Positions 27,605 through 56,936 of a stretch of 64,000 nucleotides of DNA are shown in pieces. The translations under genes and the position numbers were made by a program. The stretch is taken from IMG/VR virus record IMGVR_UViG_3300005826_000294, positions 62,001 to 126,000 of that record; one strand, written 5' to 3'. Each line of letters begins with the position of its first letter. Positions within the stretch are counted from its first letter, which is position 1. The notes under the pieces are model-generated. The model had not been told where the DNA came from, did not search any database, and saw only the letters and a program-made list of their open reading frames with translations.

Positions 27605-28260
27605 ATATTTCTCCTAAAAATAAATGTTCCCATTTTATATGTTTTATCATGCCAAATATCTTCTTTTTTTAATTCAAATCCTTCTTTTTTTAATATTTTA
27701 TTTAAATCATCTCTTCCAATATAAAATCTAATATCAGGTATTTTATTATATGTTTTTACTTGTTCAATTTTTGTTTTATCATCTGTAATAAATAATCTAT
27801 GAGATATAAACCATTTATTTGCACTTTTAAGCATATTTTTAAATGCCTTTTCCCAATTATGAATAAGTTCTAATACTGCAGATTCCATAACAATATCATA
27901 TTTTTTAATAGCGTTTATATCACATATATTTTTTATATAAAATTTACCATTTGTAAAATTTTTTTTAGCAATATTACACATATTTTTAGAAATATCATAT
28001 CCAATATATTCTAAAGGCGGAATTAATCCCTTTTTTTGTAAATAAATAGCATGCCAGCCCGCTCCACAGCCAACATCTAATAAGGTTTTATTATTTTTAT
28101 CATTTTTTATTATCCATTCAAAAGCTTCATATAATTTAAAAAATGCTTCATATTTTTCAAAGTCACCAGAATCAAAATAAGATTTATTTAATTCATTATG
28201 AGCATCAGCTATTTCTTTTAAAGTCCAATCAGCTGAAATTATATTTTCAGGAACTTTCAT
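27601..28260 (-). CDS. class I SAM-dependent methyltransferase
   Basis: LLDVGCGAGW, YIGYDIS, YDIVMESAVLELI. Confidence 0.88.
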   Translation of the reverse strand: MKVPENIISADWTLKEIADAHNELNKSYFDSGDFEKYEAFFKLYEAFEWIIKNDKNNKTLLDVGCGAGWHAIYLQKKGLIPPLEYIGYDISKNMCNIAKKNFTNGKFYIKNICDINAIKKYDIVMESAVLELIHNWEKAFKNMLKSANKWFISHRLFITDDKTKIEQVKTYNKIPDIRFYIGRDDLNKILKKEGFELKKEDIWHDKTYKMGTFIFRRNI

Positions 28261-29014
28261 AATAGTTCTCCATTATATCATTTATATGTTTAATCCATTT
28301 TTCAAATTCTAACGTTCCTTTTCCACTATTACATATTTTACAACATGAAACTAAATTATTTTCTATATATCCTTTTGAATTATCAATTCTATCTAAATTT
28401 ATAACATTTGTAATAGTTCCACAATAAAAACAAGGTTTTCCTAAAAATGATTTAAATTCTTCAAATGATATTAAAAATTCAAAATTTCTTCTTGAAGCAC
28501 TATAAATATAATTTTTAAATTGTCTATTTAATCCATAATTATATTTATGTTTATAATTATATTCAATTTTTCTTAAAGTTTTATATCTGATAAAATTTTT
28601 AAGTTGACATATATAATCATTCCAATCTTTAATTGTTTGATTATTTTTTAACTTATTACAAATAATACAACAAGAAACTACGTTATTATAATAATATCCA
28701 AGATTATTATCTATCCTGTCTAAACTAATTGTTTCTATCTCATTACTACAATAAAAACATGGTTTATTCCAAAATGTTTTAAACTCTTTAAATGATATTG
28801 AAAAAATAATATTTCTTTCTTTCGCTTTTGTTTTATATTTACTAAATTTACCATTTATAGTTTTAGAATATAATTTTGCTTTTTTATTATTTTTTTCTTT
28901 ATTTTTGTAATAATGTAATCTACTTGCTTCTCTTCCACAATCTTTACACCAAGAACTTTTTGGATAAAAATTACAACTATTTTTTTCTAATTTACATTTA
29001 CTACATTTTTTCAT
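28247..29014 (-). mobile_element. duplicated HNH/His-Me-finger-like endonuclease; probable free-standing homing endonuclease
   Basis: N-terminal CSKC...WCKDC; two copies of KPCFYC...LDRIDN..GY...N.VSCC..CN..K. Confidence 0.75.
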
Positions 29015-29847
29015 AATTTTCCAGATATAGATAATTTCATTAATTCAAAATAAGGGTCATATATTATTTTTTTATCACTTTGAGTATGTTTCCATCCAGT
29101 TGGATAATAAGAATTTTCTAATATTCGAAACTCATGGTAATGATAACAAATAAGATTATATTTATCATTTACTATTAATTTATTATTTTCTTTTGTAATT
29201 TTATATTTGGCAATATTCCATGGTCCCATATTTATACCAGGATGTGGACAAGAAAGATGATTTTGAAATTTATTAGGAGTATCATATAAAATATTTAAAT
29301 ATCCCTGATCTGCACACATTCCATTTGGTAATGTTTCCCATTTACACCATTCTAAACATCGTTCTTTCCACCATAAAAGAAATTCTTTACAATAATTATC
29401 ATTTCGATATCCTAATATCCCAACATTAAATCTAACACCAGATCTTGGTGGTTCAAATCCATGGTCTACAACCATCAAAGAGTAATCCCCCATAACTTGT
29501 TCTATTTCATTTGGATCAGACCAAAAAGCAATGTCGGCATCAGTATAATATAATGTATTTATATAGCTAAAATTATTAAAGATATATAAAGGTAATATTG
29601 GAGATATAGTTGCATAATATTCTTTTAATAATCTTGTATGTTTAATAGTAACAAGTTCTGGAAATTGATTTTCTAAATCTTTTAATTTAATTAGTATTAC
29701 ATTATTTAATTTAGAAGAAATATTATAAACATTATCATCTAAACATAATATAAATAATATACTATTTTTATCTTGTTTATGAAGAGTATAATTACAAACC
29801 AAACCTTTATTAAAATAATTAGAATCAAAATATGTACAAAAATACAT
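29011..29847 (-). CDS. GT-A glycosyltransferase (GT8-like), paralog of 40872-41735
   Basis: CTYFDSNY, LCLD, YYTDADIAF, FNVG, WWKERCLEWC, DQGYLN, LICYHY. Confidence 0.75.
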   Translation of the reverse strand: MYFCTYFDSNYFNKGLVCNYTLHKQDKNSILFILCLDDNVYNISSKLNNVILIKLKDLENQFPELVTIKHTRLLKEYYATISPILPLYIFNNFSYINTLYYTDADIAFWSDPNEIEQVMGDYSLMVVDHGFEPPRSGVRFNVGILGYRNDNYCKEFLLWWKERCLEWCKWETLPNGMCADQGYLNILYDTPNKFQNHLSCPHPGINMGPWNIAKYKITKENNKLIVNDKYNLICYHYHEFRILENSYYPTGWKHTQSDKKIIYDPYFELMKLSISGKL

Positions 29848-31358
29848 TAGAACGTCTCCACTTTTATTATTGCATTTTCAGAACCCCAATCTATATGTTC
29901 ATTTGCTACTGGATTTTTATATTTTATCCATTCATGTAAAAAATTAGTATTTATAGTTCTTAATCTTTTCCACTCTCTTTTATCATATCTAAAAGAATGT
30001 AAATCATTTTTATCATTTCTTGTATGATCTTGATGAATTCCAACTATTCTATGTTCTCTAATAAGTGGAACTCCAGAAAAAGACATTCGTAAAGCAAAAT
30101 CATCATCTTCACCAGTTATTCCCTTCATAAATTTTTCATCAACTCCATTTATAGCAAGAATATGTTCTTTACGAACTGCAATATAATACCACCACCATCC
30201 AAAAGTTACTGAAGGATCTGCTTTTGCTCCGGGAATTTCTAAAATATTATCAAAATCCATATATTTTATATTTATTTTTTTCACTTCATTAACAAATTTT
30301 TCTGATGATCTAAAAACATCACCGTAAACACAATATCCTTTATTTGCCATTTCCCATGATATTTTTAAATTATCTTCTTTTATAAGAGTTTCTGGCCCAG
30401 TTATAACAGTTACAGATCCTCGACTATGTTTTAATCCAATATTATTACTTAATGCTGGCACAAATGATGCTGGTTTAATTGCTCCTTTTTGATTATCAAT
30501 TAATATATATTTAAATTGTAATCTATATTCTCTTGAAAATTGTTTACATAAACCTAAAATATTATCTTTACTTTTATCATCAATAATAACTATTTCAAAT
30601 TCTTTTTTTGGTAAAGTTTGTTTTATATATGTTTCAAGAGTTCTTCTAAAAAATCCAATTCTATTATAAATTGAAATAAGAATAGAAACTTTTATACCAT
30701 CTTCTCCAATAACTACTGGTAAAATTTTAGGAGGAGGAGTTGCTACATCAATTCTTGTTGGTAATGTAACAGGTTTATTTTTCTTTCGTTTCGGTACTTT
30801 TATTTCTTCTTTTGCTTGTTTAGCTCTTTCTTTTTTTTCTATTTTAGGGTTTTTTACCATTTTTTGAGCAGGGCGCTGAGGAGGTTGCTTATATTCTGCA
30901 GGATTTGGGGATTTGGGACCAAATCCATCAATAGAAATAACTTTTCCTATTGTGTTAATATTATCTACAGGACCCTCTTCAAGTTGAACAATTATCTTAC
31001 GTACTAAAATACTACCACTTCCTTCACTACCTCTCCATATCCTAAAAACCATAGGAACAGTTTTAGGAAAATCTTTTGTTATTACATCAACATCAAATGT
31101 TGTCCAATTTCCATTTTCACATAAAATTTTTGAATGATGAAAATCATAATTTCTGTTTCCATATAAATTACAATATATTATTCCATTTCCACTTTCTCTG
31201 CATAGTTCTAATGTAACTTTATAAACAGCATTTGGTAAAATATTTACGGGAATATATAACAGTGATTTAGGACCAACCATAGCTGTGTATTTTCGTCCAT
31301 TAGAGTCTTTTCTACTGTTAATTGAACGTCCTCGCCAAGATGGTTGAAATATTTCCAT
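29847..31358 (-). CDS. GT2 glycosyltransferase with shared N-terminal domain and Lys/Pro-rich linker
   Basis: C-terminal ILISIYNR, EIVIIDD, NGVDEKF...GEDDDF; N-terminus similar to 7922-9319. Confidence 0.85.
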   Translation of the reverse strand: MEIFQPSWRGRSINSRKDSNGRKYTAMVGPKSLLYIPVNILPNAVYKVTLELCRESGNGIIYCNLYGNRNYDFHHSKILCENGNWTTFDVDVITKDFPKTVPMVFRIWRGSEGSGSILVRKIIVQLEEGPVDNINTIGKVISIDGFGPKSPNPAEYKQPPQRPAQKMVKNPKIEKKERAKQAKEEIKVPKRKKNKPVTLPTRIDVATPPPKILPVVIGEDGIKVSILISIYNRIGFFRRTLETYIKQTLPKKEFEIVIIDDKSKDNILGLCKQFSREYRLQFKYILIDNQKGAIKPASFVPALSNNIGLKHSRGSVTVITGPETLIKEDNLKISWEMANKGYCVYGDVFRSSEKFVNEVKKINIKYMDFDNILEIPGAKADPSVTFGWWWYYIAVRKEHILAINGVDEKFMKGITGEDDDFALRMSFSGVPLIREHRIVGIHQDHTRNDKNDLHSFRYDKREWKRLRTINTNFLHEWIKYKNPVANEHIDWGSENAIIKVETF

Positions 31359-31366
31359 TAGTTAAA

Positions 31367-33604
31367 TTACTCCCTATTTTTAAATAATAAATTATATAAA
31401 TGATTAATATTGAAATTATTTGCTTTTTCTCTTGCCGCACGAGATACTGTTCGACAATTAAAAGAACATTTTTCTAATAATTTCCTATTGTTCTTGAATT
31501 TTTGAATTTCTCGAATAAATAAAGCAGGATTGTTTGAATTCCAAACCAAACTACCAGTAATTCCATCAAATACTATCTCCGAAATGGCTCCTACATCTGA
31601 AGCAATAACTGGAACTCCAGCCATCATTGCTTCCAAAATAACAAGAGGCATTCCCTCCATGGTTGAAGGAAGAATTAATAAATCAAAAGTAGCATAAAAC
31701 TCTTCAACATTGTCTTTTGATCCAATAAAACACACATTGTTTAATTGCTTCGCCATTTGTTCTAAAGGTTTTCTTTGAGGCCCGTCTCCAACAATTACAA
31801 AAGAAGCATCTGGAATTACTTTAGCACAATATAATATAATAGGAATATTCTTTTCAGGAGATAATCTTCCAACAAAACCTATAGTAAAATTTTCATTTAA
31901 TTTTTTCTCAACATTAAATCTTTCCCAATCAATTTGTTGAGGAAGAACAGCAACATTCTTATTACCATCTTTTAATAACTTTCTCCCCATCTTATTTGAA
32001 ACAGCCGTTATTAATGTAACATGTTCTCCGCGAGATGAAACTTTATTCATAGAATCATTCCAACTTAATTCGCTATGAACTGTTTCTACAATTCTACGCC
32101 TAAAACCTTGCTTCCATGCTTCTTGAATAACTCTATATACTCCAAAACTATTATAAAAATGAATTATACTATAATTTTCAGCTTCAATAAGGCATTTTAA
32201 TGCTTTATCTCTTCCCGAAGATGATAAATCCTCTATAATAACTCCCATATCTTTCAAAGATTGTTTAAACTTTTCTTCAGTTCCAGATATTAAAGCTACA
32301 TGAGGTTCATAAATTGATTTATTTAATTGAGAAATTGCTTGCTTAATCCATATCTCACCACCACCAACCATTTTATATGGAATAATATATAAAACTTTTC
32401 TTTTTATAGAAAGTTTTTTTGGAATAGGAAGATCTAAAATCATTTGAGCAGCATTTTCCCAAGAGAATTTTTTAACAATCTCTCTGGCTGGATTTTTAAT
32501 CCTCTTCAACTCCTTATCAAGATTTTTATAAGAATGATATAATAATTCTTTAAAATTTTCAATACTAGGATCTCCTACAACAGCACCTTTCATAACTCCC
32601 CAATACTGCATAGAATTTGGAGCTTCCATTTCTCCTGTATCAACCAATAAAGAATTATCATCATTTAAGAAATCTAATTGTCCTCCGTGTCTTGGAGCTA
32701 TAACCAATTTTTCGCAAGCTAAGGCCTCAAGAAGAGGTAAGCAAAAACCTTCCGTAGCACTCATACTAATAACTACATCACAAGCAGTATATAATGCTCC
32801 CATACTTGGAATAAATGTATTTACAACTTCAATCTCAGGAGGATTTTTCTTTCCTTTAAGATTATTTTCAATAATGGATTTTACATCAACTTCAAAAGGC
32901 TTAGTTTTATCAGGAGTTATAAATTGGGTTTTTAAAACTAAACAAACATCATCTTTGCTTGTGAATGTCTCAATATAACCTTTGATTACCCTTTCATGGA
33001 GTTTTCTATGGTGAGGAATAGCATTATGAAGGAATTTTACTTTTTTGTTTGTTTTTAATTTAAAAGGAGTAATATTGGGATTGAAAATAGTTTGATCAAC
33101 ACCATGAGGGACAATTAACATCTTATTTTTAGGAACACCATTATTAGCAAAAATATCATATGAAAATTGGCTTGAAGGAAGAATATAATCTATTGCCCTG
33201 CTATAATACTGCCATCCAGGAGGTAATACCGAACTCTCAAAGTTCCATATGGCCGCTTTACATTTGGACTCAGGAAAGAAACGCCTTGGATATTGATAAA
33301 ATATTGTATATGCTAATTCTAAATCATAAGGTCTGTTTTTGTCTTCAATTTCGGGTTTAGGTTGTTCTTTTGTAACAATAATCTCATTACCTTGCCCATC
33401 AACATATTCCGTGGGACCTTGAACCAAATGCCCATGATAACCAGAAAGTAAAATATCTTTTAAATCTTCAGGAAAATATTCTAATCCATTTGTGGATTTA
33501 AAATATATTTCATGTTCGGTTTTCTTCATTGCTCTGGCCAATGCTTGAGCTGTATAACTCCACGAATGGTTAGTTGCTCCCATTGTATGCCATCTTACTT
33601 TCAT
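31367..33604 (-). CDS. tandem two-domain GT4 glycosyltransferase
   Basis: First domain EGFCLPLLEALAC; second FVGRLSPEKN...EGMPLVILEAMMAGVPVIASDVG. Confidence 0.92.
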   Translation of the reverse strand: MKVRWHTMGATNHSWSYTAQALARAMKKTEHEIYFKSTNGLEYFPEDLKDILLSGYHGHLVQGPTEYVDGQGNEIIVTKEQPKPEIEDKNRPYDLELAYTIFYQYPRRFFPESKCKAAIWNFESSVLPPGWQYYSRAIDYILPSSQFSYDIFANNGVPKNKMLIVPHGVDQTIFNPNITPFKLKTNKKVKFLHNAIPHHRKLHERVIKGYIETFTSKDDVCLVLKTQFITPDKTKPFEVDVKSIIENNLKGKKNPPEIEVVNTFIPSMGALYTACDVVISMSATEGFCLPLLEALACEKLVIAPRHGGQLDFLNDDNSLLVDTGEMEAPNSMQYWGVMKGAVVGDPSIENFKELLYHSYKNLDKELKRIKNPAREIVKKFSWENAAQMILDLPIPKKLSIKRKVLYIIPYKMVGGGEIWIKQAISQLNKSIYEPHVALISGTEEKFKQSLKDMGVIIEDLSSSGRDKALKCLIEAENYSIIHFYNSFGVYRVIQEAWKQGFRRRIVETVHSELSWNDSMNKVSSRGEHVTLITAVSNKMGRKLLKDGNKNVAVLPQQIDWERFNVEKKLNENFTIGFVGRLSPEKNIPIILYCAKVIPDASFVIVGDGPQRKPLEQMAKQLNNVCFIGSKDNVEEFYATFDLLILPSTMEGMPLVILEAMMAGVPVIASDVGAISEIVFDGITGSLVWNSNNPALFIREIQKFKNNRKLLEKCSFNCRTVSRAAREKANNFNINHLYNLLFKNRE

Positions 33605-34500
33605 TTATTTCTCCTTATATCACACATTCTTAATTTCTTATCAATTGTAATTTTAGCACAACCGAATTTTTCTGCTATTTGTTTTCTTGTTAGTTTTTGA
33701 ATAATATATAAATTATATAGAGTTTCTTTGGAAATATCTATTTTATAATTTATTTTTCCAATGGGATTAAGATCCCATTTATATGATAAAGATTTAAAAG
33801 GAGGCTTGCCGATATATTCTAATAATAAAGGAACAGAGGTTTTAGGAATAAATATCCTATAATCTTTCTTATAATTCATAACAGATGATTTTATTTGTAT
33901 TTCTTTGTTTAACTTATAAGAAAGAAAATTTATTTCATTATAACTAAAACAATCAGTACAGAAAATAGCATATTCTTTATTAGGAAGAGAACCATCTCCT
34001 AAATACCAATGAAGAACAAGATTTGGGGAAATTTTTAAATCAGGAATTATCTTCTTTCTATTTATATACCACTTTTTTTCTAACTCTTCAAACTGTATAG
34101 AACAATGCGTTGAAAATATATATCTTGTATACCATTTGTTCCAGTTCTTATGATAATATCTTTCTTTTTGAATACTATTATTAACTAATGGTATATTGCT
34201 ATCCTTAAAAAAATTAGAAAGCCATACAGCATAATCTTCCTTGCAACTAGAAAAACAAAACTTAGCTTGATGTGTTCTTTTAGTTAAAGATCCATCTCCC
34301 AATAATTCTCCCTCTATTCTTTGTATTATCTCTTTATTAAGAGGATAATTATTTTGTTTTGCTAATCTCAAACCCTCTCCAGATGTCCTTAACTTCGTAT
34401 TCTTTAACAAAATTTTTCTAGTTTTTGATGGAGAAATTCCAACTTTCTTTGCTATTTGACGAATAGAGAATCCTTTCTTATAAAACTCTACAATTCTCAT
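33601..34500 (-). mobile_element. free-standing LAGLIDADG homing endonuclease with terminal HTH-like segments
   Basis: IEGELLGDGSL and VLHWYLGDGS; GFSIRQIAKKVGIS and LTRKQIAEKFGC; ATGA overlaps on both sides. Confidence 0.88.
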
Positions 34501-34667
34501 TTCTTTGGATAAACCAAAGGAAGTCCCTTATGTTCTTTATATAAATTGGCAATTATTTCTCTTAAAACAGCGGTAATTGTTTTAAAATTCTCTTTTGAAT
34601 ATTGAGCAAGAAAATCATATAACTCTCTTTCAATTCTTATATTAATTTGTTTTCTATTATCATCCAT
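34497..34667 (-). CDS. 56-aa ribbon-helix-helix DNA-binding protein (not in ORF track)
   Basis: AAGGAG RBS; MDDNRKQINIRIERELYDFLAQYSKENFKTITAVLREIIANLYKEHKGLPLVYPKK* has the alternating strand plus two-helix RHH pattern; TGA overlaps the next ATG. Confidence 0.8.
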   Translation of the reverse strand: MDDNRKQINIRIERELYDFLAQYSKENFKTITAVLREIIANLYKEHKGLPLVYPKK

Positions 34668-34679
34668 TATTGCTCCTTT

Positions 34680-34765
34680 AAAAACAGCTTTAATAATATA
34701 AATATATAGTTATTGATAGATTTATGATATATTTATTGAAGCATTATGATATAAAAAAAATTTTA
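34680..34765 (-). promoter_or_regulatory. probable promoter/operator of the glycan operon with ~11-bp-spaced direct repeats
   Basis: Intergenic gap before the RHH gene; exact TTATGATATA at 34722-34731 and 34744-34753, related TTATTGA at 34710 and 34733. Confidence 0.45.
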
Positions 34766-37732
34766 TCAACTTTTTATCCACTCATCTATCCAGCCGTGGC
34801 AATCAACACGATACTCTGAAAATGCAGCTTCTCGGAAATAATCTACTTGTTTTGTAGTTGTTGGAGTCGCAATTAATCCCCTACTATGAGCTGCTTCTCC
34901 ACCAGCATTTCCACCTAACCGAAATGTAGATGTATTCCAAAGAGTTGTTCCACTTGAAGAATCACCTTCTCCATTAACAAAAAAGTAAGAAGTGCTTGCA
35001 GAATTAACCTGAATATAGGCTTGTAAAATAGCATATGAAGCGGTCGCTGGAATATGATCAACAAGTGATAAAGTCTGTATTGATACATCTGCTGAGCCAC
35101 CCCCTGTAAATCCTCCAGTAGGTTGGCTTTGTGTAGCATAACTAAATTGTTGCCCACTTTGGAATACTTTTGCCAGATTACCACTACCATCAATATAATC
35201 CGCCCATAAATACTCAAAATTAGAATATCCAGCCGGACCAGTAGAAGGTGGATTATCACTGGCTCTAATGCTCAATATATTATCATCCCCACTAGATGGT
35301 ACAGCATACCAATATAGCCATTTGCTGTTTCCTTGAGATCCAGCTTCATCATATCCAAGATCTGCAATTCCTGTTGCAACTGCCCAATTAAGGGTTCCTA
35401 TAACTGTTCGTTGTTTCCCATCCTGTAGAGTTAATTTAACAGTAGAAGGTTGCCCTGAATATGCCAAAAAATCCACGGTAGTTACTGTTTGCCATATTCC
35501 CTTAAATGGTTTTGTATCTGGCAAGTATGGTGCTTGGGCTCGCGCCTCGTTGGCTCCCGGATACAGGGCGTTTCGATACCCGGCAAGTTGGATGGTCCAG
35601 GTCGATGAAACCGACTGGCCGAACTGCACCGCCAGTTCGCGTGCAGGGCACGCCATCCTTCTGGCGGCGCTGTAAGAACTATTCGTCGCAAATCGCTGAG
35701 TGTAGGGTTGTGCTGATGCTGCGGTCCAACTCGGTGCGGCTTCCGCAGCCAGCCACAACTGCTGATTGGTGGAAGAAACAATTCCGTGGACGTCTATCTC
35801 ATCAGCACTTTCTGGCATCAAAGCCCGCAGAGCGGTGGTCTTGTCCACCCAGGAACCGACCGTCCCAGGAACCGCCGAATCCCCAGAGTCGAGTGTGTAG
35901 GCCGTTAGATCTTTGGCCAGCGGCTCGTACCACCCACCCTCGGTCATCAGGAACTCTTCAAGCACCACAGGTCCCGTAGAAGTCACCCGCACCGTCCACA
36001 GGTAGCGGTATACGGAGAAGCTCGGTGGCCCCGAGGTTCCCGGCACCGCATCTTTGGACAGCACAAGCTTAGCCCTCGTGACGTCGGTGTCGCTCTCGAC
36101 CGCGAATAGGTGATAGAGGTCCCCCGCCGATTCGGCCGTGGCATCACCCGTGTCACGGCCACCAATGCCGTCCGTGTCGATGTCACACGTCAGAGGCAGG
36201 CTCGCTTTGCGCCGGACGCCATCGTTGAACAGGAGCCGCATCTCGGAGTCAGCACCGATGGCGGCGGTAGCGTTGATGAGCGATGTATCAGAGCTGTCTC
36301 GTGCAAAGACGGGTGTGTTTTCGGGATGGACGTAGCCACCGCGAATTTGACGTATCGCCGAACGAGACGTAAAGGACAATCCACCAAATGTGGTCGCCCC
36401 AAAGACCGTGCCAGATCCAGCGTCGTGGTATTCACCGAGATCTATCGTATTCGAGCCAGAACTGAGATCTAACTCTACTACGCCAGACAGTGGCGTCCAG
36501 TAGCCGGATACAGCTGACGCACCTTCCAGGGGGACCCAGCTTCCGGAATTTACACGATAAGCCAATGTGCGTGTCGCTGTGGAAGAACTAGAAATGATCA
36601 CAGAATACGTTAGGGCGAGTCTTTCCCCTTCGATAATGGTGACCGTGTGAGATAGACCAGTAATGATATTCCATGCTGAGGCAGACAACCCGGTTTGATC
36701 GCTTGATAGAGCTGCCGATGAAACCTCTACCCCCCCGGCAACACCATTGAACTCTACGTTCGCGGTGCCTCCAACGTTGGTCACCGAGACGTTGGGACCC
36801 ACGTAGTTGACCGCTGCGGGCTTGTCGATGATGTTGACGCCATCATGGCGTATGGGGACCAGGCCGCCTCTATTTTGATCAACGTCAATCCAAGATCCGG
36901 CCTTGATGCTCCAGCTCTGCGAAGTGAAGGTCGCTGCATACAGCTCTAGCGTGTGCGAGCCCGCGTCGACCTGCACAGAGAAACTGTCATTAAGAGGACC
37001 TTGATAAGTAGTATTCGGGAGCACCTCTGATAAAACGTTCCCAATCAAGGTGCCATCAAGACGAAGCTGCAGGTATACAGTGTTAGCACCTGTTCCACTT
37101 GCCCCCTGAACATGCAGTCCAACCCGGACAGTCTCGTCCTGGGTCGACTCAAACGTCACGCTCATCGGCTCCGTGGGGACGGGCGACAGTGATGTGGCCG
37201 TGATTGTCCGGTCAGCGCTCTGGATGAACTTGTTTGGTGCTAGGTTTCCACCTGCACCAGAACCACTAACAGCAACAAGCTCTAACCGAGGAGCCTGAAC
37301 CGGATTCGACGACGACCCAAGAACCTGGAGACCCGTCCCATTTATCTCTTTTGCGTAGGCCGTGACCGTGTGTGTCCCCGCAGATAGTTCAACCTCTCCA
37401 AACCATACGCTGGAGTCAAAGTTTGTTATCACACGGATTTGCCATTCGTCATCGTAACCTACCACTATAGGAGTTCCAGCTTCATCAAAAACTAATTTGA
37501 TTTGTCCAGTAGTGGCCGACACGGCATTGAATTGGCAACCGAACATGATCCGGTATAGACCAGAGAACGGAACCTCAAAGCTCATGCTGGCTTCGTCTTC
37601 CGGCATGATCTTGGTGTCCGTGGCTCCTATGGATATCGTGTTTACGGGCTGGCCGTCGCTGATTGCAATTCGGATCCCTGGAGCAGTGATGATCGCGTCA
37701 GAAATCTGGTCTACTTTTATAGATCTACTCAT
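34766..37732 (-). CDS. multi-domain fibre/receptor-binding-like virion protein, mostly GC-rich
   Basis: 988 aa, Ser/Thr/Gly/Ala-rich; three similar beta-sandwich units and two copies of a second domain; lies at the end of the structural block. Confidence 0.6.
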   Translation of the reverse strand: MSRSIKVDQISDAIITAPGIRIAISDGQPVNTISIGATDTKIMPEDEASMSFEVPFSGLYRIMFGCQFNAVSATTGQIKLVFDEAGTPIVVGYDDEWQIRVITNFDSSVWFGEVELSAGTHTVTAYAKEINGTGLQVLGSSSNPVQAPRLELVAVSGSGAGGNLAPNKFIQSADRTITATSLSPVPTEPMSVTFESTQDETVRVGLHVQGASGTGANTVYLQLRLDGTLIGNVLSEVLPNTTYQGPLNDSFSVQVDAGSHTLELYAATFTSQSWSIKAGSWIDVDQNRGGLVPIRHDGVNIIDKPAAVNYVGPNVSVTNVGGTANVEFNGVAGGVEVSSAALSSDQTGLSASAWNIITGLSHTVTIIEGERLALTYSVIISSSSTATRTLAYRVNSGSWVPLEGASAVSGYWTPLSGVVELDLSSGSNTIDLGEYHDAGSGTVFGATTFGGLSFTSRSAIRQIRGGYVHPENTPVFARDSSDTSLINATAAIGADSEMRLLFNDGVRRKASLPLTCDIDTDGIGGRDTGDATAESAGDLYHLFAVESDTDVTRAKLVLSKDAVPGTSGPPSFSVYRYLWTVRVTSTGPVVLEEFLMTEGGWYEPLAKDLTAYTLDSGDSAVPGTVGSWVDKTTALRALMPESADEIDVHGIVSSTNQQLWLAAEAAPSWTAASAQPYTQRFATNSSYSAARRMACPARELAVQFGQSVSSTWTIQLAGYRNALYPGANEARAQAPYLPDTKPFKGIWQTVTTVDFLAYSGQPSTVKLTLQDGKQRTVIGTLNWAVATGIADLGYDEAGSQGNSKWLYWYAVPSSGDDNILSIRASDNPPSTGPAGYSNFEYLWADYIDGSGNLAKVFQSGQQFSYATQSQPTGGFTGGGSADVSIQTLSLVDHIPATASYAILQAYIQVNSASTSYFFVNGEGDSSSGTTLWNTSTFRLGGNAGGEAAHSRGLIATPTTTKQVDYFREAAFSEYRVDCHGWIDEWIKS

Positions 37733-37734
37733 TA

Positions 37735-39747
37735 TTAACTCCTATAAATTACTTCATAGTCATCTGCAGAACCAGATGCTAAAATATCTATTTCATTATT
37801 ACCACTATCATAATTATAATGATTATATGTTGAAGGTGTATTATTATATTTCATCTTTACTCCATTTCTAAAAACAATAATATCATATCCAGAAGGAGTA
37901 TCTGCGGTTCCAGATCCTCTTGGTGTAGCATTTAAAGCCTCAGAAACCGTTGCTCCTGGAGTTTCGACGCCGGTCGTAGAAAATTCTTCTTCATGTGGTG
38001 TCGAACCAGATCCTGATATTTCAGCCCATTTTATTCCTGTTGCTTCTGAACTATCTGCTGTTAGAACATATCCATCAGAATCTATTGGAAGTCTTGTATT
38101 ATCTGTATCATAAACCCAAAGATCACCTTTTGTTGTTAATGGAGAGGAGGTTCCACTTCCAGATACATAACCATCAAGAGTAATTTGAACAACATTTCCA
38201 TTATTATCTAAATAAAATAATTCTGTATCACCAGCATCATCTTTTGTATATAATAACCCACTATTTTCTAAAGTCGATGGATCATTAATTTCATTTAATG
38301 CTAAATATCCATCAATCTCTAAAGCATCTGTTCCATATCCATCTATAAAAACTGGTTCTCCATTAATAACCCATATTATATTTCCATTAATATATGATTC
38401 GTGAAGGGTTCCAGAACCACTACCTCCTCCGCCTGGTGGAGGTGTCCAAGAGCCATCGGCTCTCAAATAATTAGTCGTTCCCCCTCCAGATGCTGGAGCT
38501 AAACCTTTAAGAGAATCTGTAAAACTATTAAGAATTTCGGTTGCTTGAGAAGAAGTCAAATCAACTGGGTCTCCAGTCCCTGAACCAGAAACTCTACCTT
38601 TGATTGTTGATTGAGCCATATCTGTAAGTTTTGTATTATCAACGACACCAGTATTAATCGTAGGGCCTGGATATGTTCCTGTAAGATCTCCAGAAGCAGA
38701 CCCTATTGGATTTCTTGAATCACTTAATCTAGAATCATTTCCTTGACAAATTGTATTAGCAGAGGAACCATATGTTGGTGTTATAATAGCATCAATATTA
38801 TCTCCTATATTTGTAACACCATTAGAACCTGTAATTGAATCGGTTTGTCCAAATAAATATCCATCTAAACGATATGAAAGACCATAATCATCCATATAAA
38901 TAAGAGCAGAATGTCCTTCTATTTCTTTTGAATATAAAAGACCAGCATTTACTAATGGTAAAGGATCATAAATATCATTTAGAGTTAAATATCCATCAAT
39001 TTCTATAGCATTTTCTTCATTTGCGTCAATAAAAATTGGACCGGAATCCGCATTAATTATTCTTCCTTCGCCACTTCCTCCTTGGTCATATGCTTGATCA
39101 AGAGTGTTATTTAAGGGAATATCTATCCATTTAATACCTAATAATTCTGTACTATCTGCAGATAAAATTTGAGTATCTGTTCCAACGGGAATTCTAGAAG
39201 AAGTTGTTCCATATCCATAAAGATCACCTTTAGTTGTTAAAGGATCAATAACAGATATGTCTTCCCATTTAAATCCAATTGCTTGAGAACTATCAGCCAT
39301 TAAAATTTTGTAATTTGTTCCAATAGGAAGACGATCTTCAACAGTAGAAAACCCATATAAATCACCTTTAGTTGTAAGAGGAGAATCAATTGGTAAACTA
39401 CTAATAGTAATACGTTTTTTATTCCATGAATCAGTACTATCTTCAATTATAAACTCATCAGAAACTGCGGGAGAGCTTTTTAGAGTAATCTGATGAATTT
39501 CGTCAGAGACATTATCGTGTATAGCATCATTGTCTGTTCCAACAAGAGATTCTAAAACAGTTACTCTTTTCCTAACACTTCCAAGTTCTTCTAAATCTGA
39601 TCCTAAAACAGATTGAACTGAAAAAATAGCATCTCTAATTGAAAGTATTTGACTTATATGTGATACATCTTGCTTATTAACAAGGTTGGGCATTTCTGTA
39701 GTTGTATCTAAACTAGTTGGGAAATTACTTTTCCAAGTTTTTACCAT
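37735..39747 (-). CDS. fibre-like virion protein with internal repeats
   Basis: 3x PLTTKGDL...RLP...LxADS...GxKW; 2x TL..AY...IDGYL.LN.I.DP; context. Confidence 0.65.
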   Translation of the reverse strand: MVKTWKSNFPTSLDTTTEMPNLVNKQDVSHISQILSIRDAIFSVQSVLGSDLEELGSVRKRVTVLESLVGTDNDAIHDNVSDEIHQITLKSSPAVSDEFIIEDSTDSWNKKRITISSLPIDSPLTTKGDLYGFSTVEDRLPIGTNYKILMADSSQAIGFKWEDISVIDPLTTKGDLYGYGTTSSRIPVGTDTQILSADSTELLGIKWIDIPLNNTLDQAYDQGGSGEGRIINADSGPIFIDANEENAIEIDGYLTLNDIYDPLPLVNAGLLYSKEIEGHSALIYMDDYGLSYRLDGYLFGQTDSITGSNGVTNIGDNIDAIITPTYGSSANTICQGNDSRLSDSRNPIGSASGDLTGTYPGPTINTGVVDNTKLTDMAQSTIKGRVSGSGTGDPVDLTSSQATEILNSFTDSLKGLAPASGGGTTNYLRADGSWTPPPGGGGSGSGTLHESYINGNIIWVINGEPVFIDGYGTDALEIDGYLALNEINDPSTLENSGLLYTKDDAGDTELFYLDNNGNVVQITLDGYVSGSGTSSPLTTKGDLWVYDTDNTRLPIDSDGYVLTADSSEATGIKWAEISGSGSTPHEEEFSTTGVETPGATVSEALNATPRGSGTADTPSGYDIIVFRNGVKMKYNNTPSTYNHYNYDSGNNEIDILASGSADDYEVIYRS

Positions 39748-39793
39748 TAGCTCTCCTCCGAAAAATTCTATAATTATGTATAGATATTAATAG

Positions 39794-40900
39794 TTAAAGT
39801 ATATTTACTCTAAAACGTTTTATATATTGCCCACCTTCTTGATATATAATTCTTCCTTGAAATGAAACATCATTAGATCCTGAATCACCATCTTGATATA
39901 ACCCTGGATAACCATAAACACCATTTGATCCAGGAGTTCCAGCCGGTCCATTTGCTGCTGATTCATCACAACCACTAACACCTCCTGTTGATCCATCATA
40001 ACCATTCATACCGCCTCCACATCCAGCACCACCTAATCCTCCTGGTCCACCTATTCCATAAGAACCAGCAGAACCACCATCTGCATCTCCACCAATTCCT
40101 GGTTCTCCACTTGAATAAGATGATGAATTTATTGAAAACCATGAACTTGTTGGCCTAGAAGATTCAATAACTATATTTCCTCCATTTCCTCCATTCCTTC
40201 CAGCTCCACCAGTTCCTCCAGCTCCTCCACTTGTAGCACAGCCTCCTGATCCACCAGTTCCACCATTTCCACCATTATAAGAACCTAAATCACAATCAAT
40301 ACTACAAGCAGCATCACCTCCATTTCCTCCATTTCCTCCATTTCCTCCATTTCCTCCATTTCCTCCATTGGCATTCCCACCATTTCCACCATTACCACCA
40401 TCTGATTCTATATTTCCAAGTATAACTTCTACAGAAGATAAAGTAAGATCTCCTCCATTTCCAGCATATCCTCCACCTAAAGCAATTCCGCCATTTGTTG
40501 GATAACCACCAAATTCACCACCCCCACCACTTCCGCCATTTCCTCCACCACTACAAAAGACAGCATCAATCCCATTAGCTCCATTAGTTCCATTGGCCCC
40601 ATTAGTTCCATTAGTTCCATTAGAACTACTACCAGTTCCACCATTATATCCTTTTGTACTTATAGTATTTCCAACACTATATATTTTTCTAATAGCATTA
40701 ATTTCACAATCATTAGAATATCCATTAACATTAGCATGTATATATGCTTCAATACAATTTATAGAAAAATTACTTATAATCGTAGTAGCAGATGATATTG
40801 TAAATATCCCAACATTTATATGAACTCCACCTATATTTCCACCAGAAAAAGTCCAATCATCTCCTCCATGATCACCCCCACCAGTTGCAGTCCAAGTCAT
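39794..40900 (-). CDS. glycine-rich (GGN/GxN repeat) virion-associated protein
   Basis: GTNGTNGANGTNGANG, (GGN)n runs, scattered Cys. Confidence 0.6.
40321..40365. repeat. perfect 9-bp tandem repeat x5 (CATTTCCTC), encodes GGN
   Basis: Read directly. Confidence 0.95.
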
Positions 40901-41735
40901 TTAAAAAATCCTCCCTAAATAAACAATATTTTTTATAATATGAATCATATATGTATTTTGATACATTATCTCTAAACCTAACAGAAGCATCATAACCATT
41001 TTTATTAATTTTAAGACCTTGATAATGAAAACAAATTAATAAATCATTATCAACATATATCTTATCATTTTTTATTTTTAATTGATGTTTACACATATTC
41101 CAATATGCTAAATTGATACCATGATGTTTTGATATCAAAACACCTTTAAACTTTTCTGGTTGATCATAAAAAATATTAAAATATCCTTCTTCGGAAAACC
41201 TTCCCCCTTCTCCTGGTTTCCATAAACACCATTCAATGGTTTTCTTTTGCCACCATTTTAAAAATTTATTTCCCAATTTATCATTTTTGCAAGCATAAAA
41301 TCCACCATTATATCTTCCTTGTCTTGGAGGAGGTTCCCCAGATTCTCGTGATGTAACCATAAAAGAATAACTGCCAAGAATGTCATTTATTTGAGAACTT
41401 TTGTCCCAAAAATATAAATCCGAATCAACATAATAAACACAATTCTCATTATAAATGTCAAATATATAACTAGGAATAAAGACCTTACAAGTTTGAGTAT
41501 AAGCATTCCAAGGTCTTGTTAATCGAGCCTTAAATAAATCTGGATAATAGTTTTCTAAATCATATAATTGGATTGGTATTATATTATTTTTATATTTATA
41601 TGCTTCTTGAAAAACTCTTTGATCTAAACATAAAACATAAATTTTCATTGTTGGATCAAAATCTATTATTGATTTACAACATAACCAACCTTCTATTGAA
41701 AAATTACTATCAAATAACATACATGCCGAAATCAT
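40872..41735 (-). CDS. GT-A glycosyltransferase (GT8-like) among fibre genes, paralog of 29011-29847
   Basis: [45 protein letters not shown]. Confidence 0.75.
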
Positions 41736-53266: not shown

Positions 53267-56200
53267 TTATCGCTCCTCTATATTAACAGAAATTGTTCCC
53301 GGAGCAATATATTCATTACCCTCGGCAGAAATACTTTCCTTCGTACCAGAAATATTTGCTTTATTAAATCTTGTAACTCTAACTCTATCTACACCAGCAA
53401 CATTATAGATATTACTTACTATATCTGAAGCATCTAATGTTGTCCCAAGTTCCTCTGAATTTAATATAGAACTAATATTATCAGCAACATCCTGTTTAAC
53501 AGTTTCTTCTTTATCTTTAAAAGATGTATCTATTACTACATATACGGTTACATCAATTTTTATCTCAGTAGCAGATTTTACTAAAACATCTGCTGTAATT
53601 GGTCTAGAATCTTCAATTGCCTCTGTAGAATCAACAATAAGTTTATTATATTCATAATTAACAGTTATTCTTTCACCCTCTTTTGGAGCAGTATAAGTAT
53701 AATCTACAGAATATGTAGAACTTAATGCTGGTTGATTTAAACTATCAATAGTTATATTACCCTGAATATTTCCTATTGAATCTTGAAAACCAGATATTCT
53801 GTTAATAGAATATATATTTCCAAATCGTTTTTCTGTAATTCCTACACCATTTTTAGAGAAAAATAAATCTTCTGTATCAAATTGCTGGGCATAATAAAAA
53901 ACAACTCTTAATTGTGTCCCTGTACTAATAGGATTTGATGTATTTATTGAAGTATCTGACAAACCAACTTCTGTTTTACTTAAAGATGTATTCTGTAAAG
54001 AATTTGCTTTATCCCATACATTATTATAGATAGAATAATTAGTTACATCATATGTTGTGTTAACAGATGATACTTCTTCAGTTACCGTTAATTCAATATT
54101 TTCAACTGATATTAAACGAGCTATATATATTGTTGATGGTAATGTTGCTGTATCAGAGAGACCTTTTGATCTTCTTATTAATATTGCTAAATCTAATTCA
54201 TCATTAGCAGTAGCAGTATAAATTCCAGTTATTTTATTTATTGTAGTCCCAGAGATACGTAATAACCCAGAAGTTGATAAACCACCTATATTGACTTGAA
54301 GTCTAGATGGAGATCTTCTCTTATTAGAAATAATTGTTGTTCCAGAAAATTCGTTTTGGACTGGTTGGTAACCATCTATATTTTGAAAACTATTTAAATT
54401 ATTTGTAGAAATAGGAAGCTCAGTTATATCAGTTTTCGGGATTAAATTAAAAAAATCAGCAACATAATTTACTCTAACGCTTGTGCCTGTTGTGGTCCCA
54501 GCATCAGAAGGAAGAGTTATTTGATTATTTAAAACAGTTCCAGATCCATAACTATCACTAGTAAATACATCATTTAAACTATAAATAACATTAACATTAT
54601 CTCCAACTTCAGCCAAAGTATCTGATGGAAGAGTAATTGTTTTATTAGAAATACTACCATTATTTAAATAAGTATTATATACTTCTGGAGAACCAGAAAT
54701 GCTAATATCTTTTATACTATGTAAATTATTAGTATTTGATGAAGTTACAACAGATTTTCCAGCAATAACACTACTAGTTTCTGATTTATATGTATTAACC
54801 GATAAAACTCTACTAATTGGAAAATCAGTAGTAATATTCATATTTTCATAGGCATCTACTAAAACTGTTTTAATTTCATCTCTTATATAATTAGAAAAAC
54901 CCCATTCAATTGAATCTTGAGCTTCATTAAGAGGATCTATTGGATTTAAATTATCTAAATCTATATGTGGATCAAAACTATAAATCCAGGTATAATCAAC
55001 TTGTAGAATATCGCTAGATGTTGGCAAAGTTCTTCCACTTATTTGTATTCTTCCTGTTGTATTTATACTTCCAGAATCATCAGGAGTTTGATCTTCAATA
55101 ACATATCTTTCACCTGTTGTTAAATTAAAAACTCTACTAACGGTCCTAACAGGATAATGTTTAAGTTGAATAAAGTTTCTTGAACTTGAAACAGAAGATT
55201 TTTCATTTGTTATTTGAATATCTTGTTTAACTGCCTCTATTGTTAAAATATCTGTAAATCCTAGGCCATCTATACTATTAGAACCTGTTTTAGTATTTGA
55301 TTCTCCTTGAAGCTGAATTTTATTATCTGTCCAACCTAATTTATCTAATCCAAATGGACTACCTGACGCTTCTCCTGTATCTTTAATAAGTTTAAAATTA
55401 CCTTGTAAATTACCTGTTTCATCTAAATATTGTTCAACAAAATTAGGCCCAGACAAACTTCCACTAACAGAAACCAAAGAAGAAACAGGTTGTTCTGGAA
55501 TTTGTGCTCCTTGTGATAATACAGCAACTCTTCTAGAATTTATAGTTAAAGAAGTGCTTGGAGTTAAACTACTTTGCCCTAAAACATAATTATTTAAAGA
55601 ATCAGTTGGATCATCTTTACCACTTTGATCATTAAAAATAAAACTATCCGTTCCAGATTGGGCATTTGTTCCCATAACATATATATCTACTCTTCCACCT
55701 GTTCCAGGTTCTGAAACAATTTTATTTCCATCATTATCATATCCAACAATGGTCCCATCTCTAACCATTAATGGATCACCTGGTTCTACAACAAGGGCAT
55801 CAATAGCATCAGATAAACTTAATATTGTGCTTCTATATGCTACTGATGTTCCTACATTAGCTCCAGCAAATGTAGCAAGAACTTTTGCTTTAAGTTCTGA
55901 ATCTAATTCTAAATCTGTTCCTCCCGTAAAAGATGTTAAATTTGTAACATTATTTACATCACTAGCACTTGTTGTAATTATTGAATATGATGCTATATTT
56001 CCAATTGACCCAGCACTTTGAGCTTCAACAGAAGCCTCAATCGCAAATTCATCATTAATATTAACAGTAGCAAGTTCTTGTCTCAATCTTGTTGCTGTAG
56101 CCCTTAAAGCATTAGATTGAGATGTATTTATAGATAAAGTAGATACTGTTAAAAATGGAATTCCATTTCTTGTTCTAACTATTGTTCCAGAAGGAATATT

Positions 56201-56504: not shown

Positions 56505-56936
56505 TTAAGCCACCCTCAAAGTGAAAGTATCTTCCAGTATTGTTAATTTTCTGGTCAAAACAGATATTTTTATTTCATATAGTCTTGGGTCTTCATTGTT
56601 TCGTAGAACAGAAACCCCTCTAATAGATGCTATTGCTTCTCCAGCCGATATATATTGAGTTCTTCCTTGTACTTTTTGTAATGCTACTAAATTATTTAGA
56701 GCTGTTTGTACAGATCTCGCTACTTCGGTTTCTAATTGAGTAGGATCAAGTAGATTACCAATAATACGAGTTCCAAGACTACTACCATACCAACGAAAAA
56801 TTTTATTAGAACCTGCGGATGTTAATATGATTTTAAGAATATCTTGAACAAGTTTTTCATTATCATGAACTGTTTGTAATGTTCCATCAGGATTTATTCC
56901 CAGATCATTATTGACGATTTTTAAGTCATAAGACAT
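56505..56936 (-). CDS. gp25/gpW-like baseplate wedge (sheath initiator) protein
   Basis: MSYDLKIVNNDL, KLVQDILKIILT..GS...WYGS, EAIASI..V; directly upstream of baseplate J. Confidence 0.8.
   Translation of the reverse strand: MSYDLKIVNNDLGINPDGTLQTVHDNEKLVQDILKIILTSAGSNKIFRWYGSSLGTRIIGNLLDPTQLETEVARSVQTALNNLVALQKVQGRTQYISAGEAIASIRGVSVLRNNEDPRLYEIKISVLTRKLTILEDTFTLRVA

What the first reader, a model, noticed from the sequence alone, without database searches (positions are those of the whole stretch)
35525..37705. GC-rich foreign segment making up most of one fibre-like gene, with an in-frame junction at a domain boundary
Seen: 36121-36180 is 42/60 G+C versus 21/60 at 35161-35220 and 13/60 at 37801-37860. 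The shift near 35525 falls between two homologous domains (..LLFNDGVRRKASLPLTCDIDTDGIGGRD..LYHLFAV..PPSFSVYRYLW.. versus ..LTLQDGKQRTVIGTLNWAVATGIADLGYD..LYWYAV..PAGYSNFEYLW..). This protein also has no D-[G/A]-Y motif. Inference: recent capture of a receptor-binding module from a high-GC phage, so domain swapping across very different genome compositions.
Basis: partly seen in the sequence, partly recalled or inferred. Interest (0 to 1): 0.6.

Follow-up and report, generated by a model that had tools for sequence, protein, structure and literature searches.

The report
GC-rich patch inside a phage fibre gene
A very AT-rich giant phage carries a tail-fibre-like gene in which codons 8 to 736 have the composition of much GC-richer phages, most likely a swap between related genes at conserved joints; this is a clear but ordinary case of fibre-gene mosaicism, not checked against reads.

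Summary
The gene at window 34766-37732 (minus strand, 988 aa) changes composition twice inside its reading frame. Codons 1-7 are native-like. Codons 8-736 (35525-37711) have GC 0.56 and GC3 0.58. Codons 737-988 have GC3 0.19. The genome's ORFs have a median GC3 of 0.13.

The interpretation needs correcting. This is not a new fusion of a foreign receptor-binding module to a native shaft. The protein belongs to a large, unnamed family of about 960-1700 aa phage proteins, and its whole five-domain layout is colinear with them.

- **Likely origin of the patch:** the closest relatives of domain D4 (53-67% identity) lie in contigs of uniform GC 0.56-0.62.
- **Joints:** the right junction falls in the low-confidence D4/D5 linker and in the family-conserved QAQAxYxPDTK motif. 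The left junction falls in the conserved N-terminal motif.
- **What was kept:** the retained domain D5 is the distal tip. Its two halves resemble the Mtd beta-sandwich and the Bdellovibrio Bd2133 fibre tip, and a trimer model passed its controls.

Best reading: recent replacement of an internal patch of a resident family gene by a GC-rich homologue. No sequencing run was listed, so an assembly chimera is unlikely but not excluded. Tree tests do not prove that the two parts have different histories.

The parts
34766..37732 (-). Whole gene, 988 aa (P0001): fibre-like protein of five beta-sandwich domains, member of an unnamed modular phage family
   Evidence: ORF. No Pfam or PHROG match. Colinear relatives at 31-42% identity over the full length. 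AF2 model, mean pLDDT 79.
37712..37732 (-). Codons 1-7 with native-like codon choice (ATG AGT AGA TCT ATA AAA GTA). They encode the family's conserved N-terminal motif. The left junction follows, at the shared 9-mer GTAGACCAG.
   Evidence: Change point at codon 7. Codon-choice log-likelihood ratio, native versus donor-like, is +8.1 for codons 2-7. GC-rich relatives write the same motif as AGC CGT TCC CTC. DNA read.
35525..37711 (-). GC-rich patch, codons 8-736: GC 0.56, GC3 0.58. Covers domains D1-D4.
   Evidence: Codon-choice LLR -538. Per-codon value -0.6 to -0.98, against -0.9 to -1.4 for relatives' genes in GC-rich contigs and +0.75 to +1.21 for native ORFs.
37265..37675 (-). D1, aa 20-156, beta-sandwich (jelly-roll or CBM-like)
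   Evidence: AF2 model. The whole-model Foldseek search matches tandem CBM, C1q and TNF-like jelly rolls.
36872..37249 (-). D2, aa 162-287, beta-sandwich. It follows the invariant SGSGAGG linker.
36338..36733 (-). D3, aa 334-465, beta-sandwich. It follows the invariant RGGLVP linker and a hairpin (aa 288-333).
35540..36325 (-). D4, aa 470-731, the first copy of the tip-like unit. This is the part with the clearest GC-rich kin.
   Evidence: 70-83% windowed identity to P0004, P0005 and P0003 at aa 510-570. Clade support 100/99. By tblastn, 53-67% identity to loci of GC 0.56-0.62. GC3 0.67.
35513..35546 (-). Right junction: support interval of the GC3 change point (codons 729-740). It lies in the D4/D5 linker and the QAQAxYxPDTK motif.
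   Evidence: change point. (pLDDT below 50 at aa 732-736). (Q733, D739 and T740 are invariant).
35150..35524 (-). D5a, aa 737-861, Mtd-like beta-sandwich with native-like codons
   Evidence: VIA-align Z 8.5, rmsd 2.7, 93 residues aligned to 1YU0 residues 52-172. GC3 0.19.
34769..35149 (-). D5b, aa 862-988, distal tip beta-sandwich, predicted to form a trimer
   Evidence: Z 10.7 and 10.6 to the Bd2133 fibre tip, 8OND and 8OK3. Trimer model score 0.78 against best control 0.48, with the interface at aa 857-985. The whole D5 unit has TM 0.65-0.77 to predicted viral proteins, some annotated as tail fibres.
37735..39747 (-). Upstream native fibre-like gene (670 aa, GC3 0.11) that ends 2 bp before P0001. 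In other phages its modules are fused to members of the P0001 family.
   Evidence: PHROG tail-protein hits. Its C-terminal 140 aa are 58% identical to the C-terminal extension of P0018. Its N-terminal repeats occur in the extension of P0019. GC3.
33601..34500 (-). Downstream LAGLIDADG homing endonuclease with an HTH domain, AT-rich. It is a neighbour and is not shown to be involved.
   Evidence: Pfam PF03161, E 6e-23. PHROG 11023. GC 0.23-0.30.

Best explanation
P0001 is a trimeric fibre or adhesin protein at the distal end of the baseplate and fibre gene block of an AT-rich (GC 0.30) jumbo myovirus-like phage. The phage already carried a full-length member of this modular family. Recombination with a homologous gene from a much GC-richer phage (about 56-62% GC) then replaced an internal patch, codons 8-736 (domains D1-D4). 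The crossovers fell in two stretches that the family conserves and that lie outside folded domains: the N-terminal motif and the D4/D5 linker motif QAQAxYxPDTK. The resident start, its first 7 codons and the distal tip D5 were kept, so the reading frame and domain order are intact. The event is recent enough that synonymous codon choice in the patch is still donor-like. D5 has nearly native codon choice but a non-native amino-acid make-up, which suggests the resident gene was itself an older import. Shown: the composition, the junction positions, the family layout, the composition of the relatives' contigs and the predicted folds. Inferred: the order of events, the recombination mechanism, trimeric fibre function and receptor binding.
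For: There are sharp double change points inside one ORF. Codon-choice LLR is +8.1 for codons 2-7, -538 for codons 8-736 and +166 for codons 737-988. Eleven relatives share the full-length colinear layout, and one is also 988 aa long. In D4, P0001 sits in a 100/99-supported clade with P0004, P0005, P0003 and the long-branched P0007. The contigs held as DNA for that clade (P0004, P0003) have uniform GC of 0.62 and 0.56, and the closest D4 relatives by tblastn (53-67% identity) lie in loci of GC 0.56-0.62. In aa 760-840 the best identity instead goes to P0017 and P0016 (80%), against 52-68% for the GC-rich clade. The right junction coincides with the pLDDT<50 linker at aa 732-736 and with invariant residues Q733, D739 and T740. 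The upstream gene is fully native (GC3 0.11) and ends 2 bp before the start codon. D5 per-codon adaptation is 0.63-0.68, against a native 5-95% range of 0.75-1.21. Its FYMINK/GARP is 0.22/0.27, against native medians of 0.37/0.18. The fibre reading rests on the gene's position after the baseplate wedge and tail-fibre-like genes, the fold matches and the trimer model (0.78 against best control 0.48; runs agree in at least 82% of contacts; partner pLDDT at least 72).
Against: There is no read or long-read support for either junction, because no run was listed. No second assembly with the same junction was found. For the C-terminal segment the tree is unresolved, and the AU test does not reject P0001 grouping with the same GC-rich clade (p 0.17 and 0.22). 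Different histories of the two parts therefore rest on composition, not on phylogeny. No close donor is known: the best match is 49% identity over the N part and 67% over D4. No relative in a genome near 30% GC, and no sister phage carrying an all-AT ortholog, was found. The seven native-like first codons are a short stretch. L018, a mid-GC relative, also starts with A/T-ending codons.
Confidence: 0.68

Rival explanations
1. Metagenome assembly chimera: the assembler threaded 2.2 kb of a homologous gene from a GC-rich phage in the same sample into the AT-rich contig.
For: The record is a metagenome-assembled contig. No run was listed to test it. Both junctions lie in family-conserved motifs, where two homologues are most alike. 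The genome holds a second GC-rich island. Syntenic relatives' contigs break just before the fibre genes, so this region is hard to assemble.
Against: A chimera needs an exact shared k-mer at both joints. GC-rich relatives write the junction motifs with different codons, and only 7-9 identical bases are shared. Composition flips within about 10 codons at each side. The insert has the right strand, the right frame and exact colinearity at both ends. No repeat flanks it. The second island also lies on the strand of its neighbours, between tRNA genes.
Confidence: 0.1
2. Reverse order of events: the whole gene arrived as a GC-rich cassette, and its C-terminal tip D5 was later replaced by a tip from an AT-rich relative (a classical tip swap). 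The AT-rich first codons would then reflect selection for weak mRNA structure at the start.
For: C-terminal tip exchange is the usual pattern in fibre genes (established knowledge). D5 is less well codon-adapted than native genes. L018 shows A/T-ending codons at the start of a mid-GC homologue.
Against: Codons 2-7 use AGA and ATA, the typical native choices, while the GC 0.60-0.62 relatives use CGT and CTC at the same positions. The left change point is inside the ORF and not in the 2-bp spacer. This scenario still needs an AT-rich homologue, so it is no simpler.
Confidence: 0.15
3. No transfer: the GC-richness reflects local amino-acid composition or selection on this gene.
For: The family is rich in Gly, Ala, Arg and Pro, and even D5 has GC1 and GC2 near 0.5.
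Against: The shift is at synonymous third positions (0.58 against 0.19) between two homologous domains of similar amino-acid make-up.
Confidence: 0.02

Closest known systems
Mosaic tail-fibre and receptor-binding genes exchanged between unrelated phages (established knowledge; modular RBP exchange is reviewed or used in PMC10408124 and PMC8262889, seen only as search listings)
   Same: Recombination inside a fibre gene at module boundaries, with the frame kept. The modules are shared with other phages, and neighbouring genes' modules are fused elsewhere.
   Different: The exchanged part is the N-terminal and middle three quarters, not the C-terminal tip. Only about 7 native codons remain at the 5' end. 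The two parts differ by about 0.4 in GC3, which is unusually large.
Bdellovibrio bacteriovorus MAT fibre Bd2133, C-terminal tip domain (PDB 8OND, 8OK3; PMC10769870)
   Same: D5b (aa 858-982) superposes on the trimeric beta-sandwich tip W913-K1031 with Z 10.7, rmsd 2.9 and 108 residues aligned. A trimer model of D5 passes its controls. The paper describes a family of chimeric fibres with swapped tips.
   Different: Sequence identity is 11%. There is no beta-helix stalk here. The host is a phage, not a predatory bacterium. No ligand is known for either protein.
Bordetella phage BPP-1 major tropism determinant Mtd (PDB 1YU0), beta-sandwich domain (Pfam mtd_2nd)
   Same: D5a (aa 737-861) aligns to Mtd residues 52-172 with Z 8.5, rmsd 2.7 and 93 residues aligned. 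The Atlas search also pointed to mtd_2nd clusters.
   Different: No C-type-lectin variable domain was matched, and no template or variable repeat pair was found near the gene. This is a fold likeness only.
Annotated tail fibres of cultured phages (Rhizobium phage Palo tail fiber, Pseudomonas phage PPpW-3 tail-collar fibre, Xanthomonas phage XAJ2 DUF2793 protein), as predicted structures in BFVD
   Same: The whole two-part D5 unit matches with TM 0.65-0.72 normalised to the query, at probability 1.0.
   Different: Sequence identity is 13-16%. Both sides are predicted models. Those proteins carry one such unit, whereas P0001 carries two in tandem after three further beta-sandwich domains.

Membership tests
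Unnamed P0001-like modular phage fibre family (P0003-P0032) | Full-length colinear alignment with the conserved linkers SGSGAGG, RGGLVP, RGGYV and QAQAxYxPDTK and the C-terminal GWxDEWI | tested here: met
   BLASTP matches query residues 13-986 to P0004 residues 194-1187, with similar spans for ten further proteins. Alignment A1 has 61 invariant columns spread over the whole length.
Phage tail fibre / receptor-binding protein (functional class) | Encoded in the tail or baseplate module | tested here: met
   The gene block contains baseplate wedge proteins (phrog_6, 2669) and tail-fibre-like proteins (phrog_9729, 1197, 32934), and P0001 is its last gene.
Phage tail fibre / receptor-binding protein (functional class) | Trimeric distal domain with a known fibre-tip fold | tested here: met
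   Z 10.7 to the Bd2133 tip. TM about 0.7 to annotated tail fibres in BFVD. Trimer model 0.78 against best control 0.48. All of this rests on predicted models.
Phage tail fibre / receptor-binding protein (functional class) | Present in the virion and binds a host surface receptor | not testable with these tools
   This needs virion proteomics or cryo-EM, and binding assays.
Horizontally acquired segment (compositional island) | Composition outside the genome's range, with sharp boundaries | tested here: met
   GC3 is 0.58 against a genome 5-95% range of 0.08-0.20. Change points are at codons 7 and 737.
Horizontally acquired segment (compositional island) | Nearest relatives live in genomes whose composition matches the segment | tested here: met
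   L003 0.62, L004 0.56, L012 0.58 and L016 0.60, each uniform along the contig.
Horizontally acquired segment (compositional island) | Phylogenetic conflict between the segment and the rest of the gene | tested here: inconclusive
   D4 is placed firmly in the GC-rich clade (100/99). D5 is unresolved, and the AU test gives p 0.17 and 0.22.
Horizontally acquired segment (compositional island) | Physical continuity confirmed by reads | not testable with these tools
   No run was listed, so read laying could not be used.
Diversity-generating retroelement target (Mtd-type) | Variable repeat in the gene's 3' end with a nearby template repeat, and a C-type-lectin fold | tested here: not met
   No repeat pair involves the gene within 33000-41000. 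No CLec match appears among the fold hits. A reverse transcriptase was not searched for.
Homing-endonuclease co-conversion tract | The imported tract is contiguous with the endonuclease gene and shares its composition | tested here: not met
   The LAGLIDADG gene (33601-34500) is AT-rich. About 1 kb of native-like sequence, including D5, separates it from the GC-rich patch.

The most novel reading that the evidence does not exclude
The conserved, unstructured linker motifs of this uncharacterised fibre family (N-terminal M-x-R-S-x-K-x-D-Q, RGGLVP, QAQAxYxPDTK) act as recombination joints. They would let whole blocks of domains move between phages whose genomes differ by about 30 points of GC. 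This gene would then be a fresh record of a co-infection, or of a shared host, between an AT-rich jumbo phage and a GC-rich phage lineage. The phage's tRNAs are mostly for A-ending codons, and its syntenic kin have GC 0.40-0.42. Both fit a phage that is much more AT-rich than its host.
Probability: 0.25. Interest if true: 0.6.

Novelty: new member of a known kind. Interest (0 to 1): 0.42.

Why it matters
Fibre-gene mosaicism is well known, but donor and recipient can rarely be told apart. Here the composition contrast (GC3 0.58 against 0.19) marks both crossover points to within about ten codons. It shows that they lie in conserved inter-domain linkers. It also shows that the exchanged block is the body of the fibre (D1-D4) and not its tip. 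That gives a natural example of where such proteins tolerate module exchange. It also hints that phages of very different base composition meet in one cell. Separately, the work outlines an unannotated and widespread fibre family: no Pfam or PHROG match, three jelly-roll domains, then two tandem units each made of an Mtd-like sandwich and a Bd2133-like tip. Defining it would improve phage annotation.

Tried and rejected
- **Phage collection:** blastn and tblastn of the gene found no match.
- **Family and structure libraries:** Pfam and PHROGs gave nothing for P0001. A profile search of PDB sequences found nothing.
- **Paralogues:** the phage's own genome holds none.
- **Reads:** no run was listed.
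- **Junction 48-mer:** the metagenome machine was busy, and viral contigs had no match. The single metagenome scan then went to the family search.
- **Sister phage with the orthologous locus:** queries with the three upstream proteins and a word search found only syntenic contigs that end just before the fibre genes (L014, L015).
- **Genome contigs:** no relative was found, so a prophage donor has no support. That scan used only two peptide patterns.
- **AU tests for conflicting history of D5:** not significant.
- **Foldseek against PDB with the D5 model:** only weak matches, TM below 0.3. The exhaustive VIA search was needed.
- **Homing-endonuclease co-conversion:** considered and set aside, because the endonuclease gene and the DNA next to it are AT-rich.
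- **DGR targeting:** set aside, because no repeat pair was found.
- **Intrinsic terminator after the gene:** none found.
- **Large representative protein search:** not run. The word searches had already found the family, and the claim does not rest on absence of relatives.
Full report
**Setting.** The window is bases 62,001-126,000 of a 301,683-bp IMG/VR virus record. The record is labelled provirus, has a CheckV completeness of 75% and a GC of 0.299. Nearly all genes run on the minus strand. The region around the finding is the end of a baseplate and fibre block. It holds baseplate wedge proteins (53267-56503 and 56505-56963), a 2303-aa protein, a 948-aa protein, a 582-aa protein with tail-fibre PHROG hits, and a 670-aa protein with tail-protein hits. 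The gene of the finding comes next. Downstream lie a LAGLIDADG homing endonuclease and glycosyltransferases. The baseplate protein is only 29% identical to that of Bacillus phage G, so this is an uncultured jumbo myovirus-like phage.

**Check of the observation.** The three 60-base counts are exact, and the D-[G/A]-Y motif is absent from this protein while neighbouring fibre-like genes have it several times. GC rises from about 0.28 to 0.62.

The gene is 34766-37732 on the minus strand and encodes 988 aa (P0001). Third-position GC is 0.58 for codons 1-736 and 0.19 afterwards. The change point is at codon 737 (window 35522; support 35513-35546). The other boundary is also inside the ORF, at codon 7. 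The first codons are ATG AGT AGA TCT ATA AAA GTA. The upstream gene, which ends 2 bp before the start codon, has GC3 0.11. Genome-wide, ORFs of 200 aa or more have a median GC3 of 0.13 (5-95%: 0.08-0.20), and this gene is the top outlier.

A codon-choice likelihood ratio compares native usage with the usage of relatives' genes in GC-rich contigs. It gives +8.1 for codons 2-7, -538 for codons 8-736 and +166 for codons 737-988.

**What the protein is.** Pfam, PHROGs, PDB sequences and the phage collection give nothing. Word searches of the large protein collection find a family of about 960-1700 aa proteins from metagenomic phage contigs. Eleven of them align with P0001 over its whole length, and one is also 988 aa long. 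The family has invariant linkers: SGSGAGG, RGGLVP, RGGYV and QAQAxYxPDTK. It also has a conserved N-terminal peptide and a C-terminal GWxDEWI.

An AlphaFold2 model (mean pLDDT 79) shows five beta-sandwich regions: D1 20-156, D2 162-287, D3 334-465, D4 470-731 and D5 737-988. Low-confidence linkers separate them, and one lies at aa 732-736. D4 and D5 are weak homologues of each other.

D5 modelled alone (pLDDT 89) has two halves.
- **D5a** matches the beta-sandwich of the Bordetella phage tropism determinant Mtd (Z 8.5, rmsd 2.7, 93 residues aligned).
- **D5b** matches the trimeric tip of the Bdellovibrio fibre Bd2133 (Z 10.7, rmsd 2.9, 108 residues aligned). [quoted passage not shown]

The whole D5 unit matches predicted structures of annotated tail fibres from cultured phages with TM 0.65-0.72. 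A three-copy model of D5 scored 0.78 against a best control of 0.48. The runs agree in at least 82% of contacts, the partner pLDDT is at least 72, and the interface lies in D5b. The tool's calibration was 21 of 30 solved same-chain pairs and 0 of 23 single chains reaching the mark, and it was made with two copies. The result therefore supports a trimer but does not show one.

Modules of the upstream 670-aa gene are found fused to family members in other phages. I therefore read P0001 as a trimeric distal fibre or adhesin. This is an inference from models and gene context.

**What the mosaic is.** The tandem D4+D5 layout is ancestral to the family, so the junction did not create a new fusion. 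The relatives whose DNA could be fetched lie in contigs that are compositionally uniform, including across this gene: 0.62, 0.56, 0.57, 0.62, 0.58 and 0.60. Others range down to 0.38-0.46.

- **D4:** P0001 is 70-83% identical in windows to P0004, P0005 and P0003. It joins them, together with the long-branched P0007, with 100/99 support. By tblastn the closest loci (53-67% identity) all have GC 0.56-0.62.
- **First half of D5:** the best identities go to other members, P0017 and P0016, at 80%.
- **Limit of the tree evidence:** the D5 tree is unresolved, and an AU test does not reject the same clade as for D4 (p 0.17 and 0.22). Phylogeny is consistent with a swap but does not prove one. The case rests on composition.

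Both boundaries lie in family-conserved stretches outside folded domains. These are the N-terminal motif, where the 9-mer GTAGACCAG is shared with a relative, and the D4/D5 linker.

D5 is nearly native in codon choice but not fully: 0.63-0.68 per codon, against a native 5-95% range of 0.75-1.21. Its amino-acid make-up is the family's, not the genome's (FYMINK/GARP 0.22/0.27 against medians of 0.37/0.18). This fits an older residence of the gene in the AT-rich lineage. A weak further change inside the patch, at codon 483 on the D3/D4 boundary (GC3 0.53 to 0.68, about the 99th percentile of shuffles), hints that the donor was itself mosaic.

**Most likely history.** A resident family gene had codons 8-736 replaced by recombination with a homologue from a GC-rich phage. 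The crossovers fell in the conserved joints. The patch is little ameliorated, at -0.6 to -0.98 per codon against -0.9 to -1.4 for the relatives' genes.

How such different phages could meet is unknown. The phage carries nine tRNAs, mostly for A-ending codons: Lys-UUU four times, Ile-UAU and Leu-UAA. Its syntenic kin have GC 0.40-0.42. The phage may therefore be much more AT-rich than its host, which would make co-infection with GC-richer phages less odd. This is an inference. No relative was found in species-representative prokaryote genomes, so a prophage donor has no support.

**Rivals.**
- **Assembly chimera.** This cannot be excluded, because no sequencing run was listed. It is unlikely, however. 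GC-rich relatives write the junction motifs with different codons and share only 7-9 identical bases. The insert is in frame, colinear and on the right strand at both ends. No repeats flank it.
- **Reverse order of events** (whole GC-rich cassette first, then an AT-rich tip swap). This is possible, but it explains the native-like AGA and ATA codons at the start less well.
- **Amino-acid composition alone.** This is ruled out by the third-position result.
- **The neighbouring homing endonuclease.** It is AT-rich and lies next to the native-like end, so nothing links it to the import.

**Verdict.** But the event was a replacement of a homologous patch inside an existing family gene. The imported block is the fibre's body, and the distal tip was retained. 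This is a clean new example of a known phenomenon, in an unannotated fibre family. Interest is moderate, and read-level confirmation is still needed.

Noticed in passing
Outside the window: genome 5849-7547 (L002 2850-4548), minus strand: A second GC-rich island (GC up to 0.66, GC3 0.58-0.60) holds three tandem pentapeptide-repeat genes. It sits between tRNA-Lys and tRNA-Met genes of the phage's tRNA array. This could be another import of GC-rich DNA into the same genome.
   Followed up: partly
Outside the window: genome 4636-13695 (L002): An array of nine tRNA genes: Lys-UUU four times, Ile-UAU, Leu-UAA, Met, Asp, and one that ARAGORN calls with a four-base anticodon (gaaa) at genome 12512-12587. 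Rfam also calls that one a tRNA (50 bits).
   Followed up: no
window 33601-34500 (-): A free-standing LAGLIDADG homing endonuclease with an N-terminal HTH and weak HNH-like hits at its C-terminus. It lies directly downstream of the fibre gene, across a 265-bp spacer in which no terminator-like site was found.
   Followed up: partly
window 39794-40900 (-): A 368-aa gene with GC 0.43 and very strong strand skew (GC skew down to -0.65). It is built of 9-nt periodic repeats that encode glycine-rich Gly-Asn-Gly-type triplets. It has no Pfam or PHROG match. A homologue of 370 aa follows the same neighbours in L014.
   Followed up: no
window 37735-39747 (-): The upstream 670-aa fibre-like protein is a patchwork of widespread short modules (PLTTKGDL... 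repeats, DUF5907- and DUF2793-type). The word search gave 971 hits, mostly covering only 10-20% of it. Its last 140 aa are 58% identical to the C-terminal extension of family member P0018.
   Followed up: partly
L014 (IMGVR_UViG_3300035158_000699) and L015 (IMGVR_UViG_3300009509_000115): These syntenic relatives of the phage have the same 953/572/290/370-aa gene order and a GC of 0.40-0.42. That is about 10 points higher than this genome. Both contigs end at or just before the fibre genes.
   Followed up: partly
window 28247-29014 (-): This ORF combines endonuclease VII and HNH hits in its N-terminal half with Srd anti-sigma and sigma-70-decoy hits in its C-terminal half.
   Followed up: no
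window 29847-33604 (-): Two large glycosyltransferase genes lie just beyond the endonuclease. One is a 745-aa protein with two GT4-type halves, and the other is a 503-aa GT2 protein.
   Followed up: no
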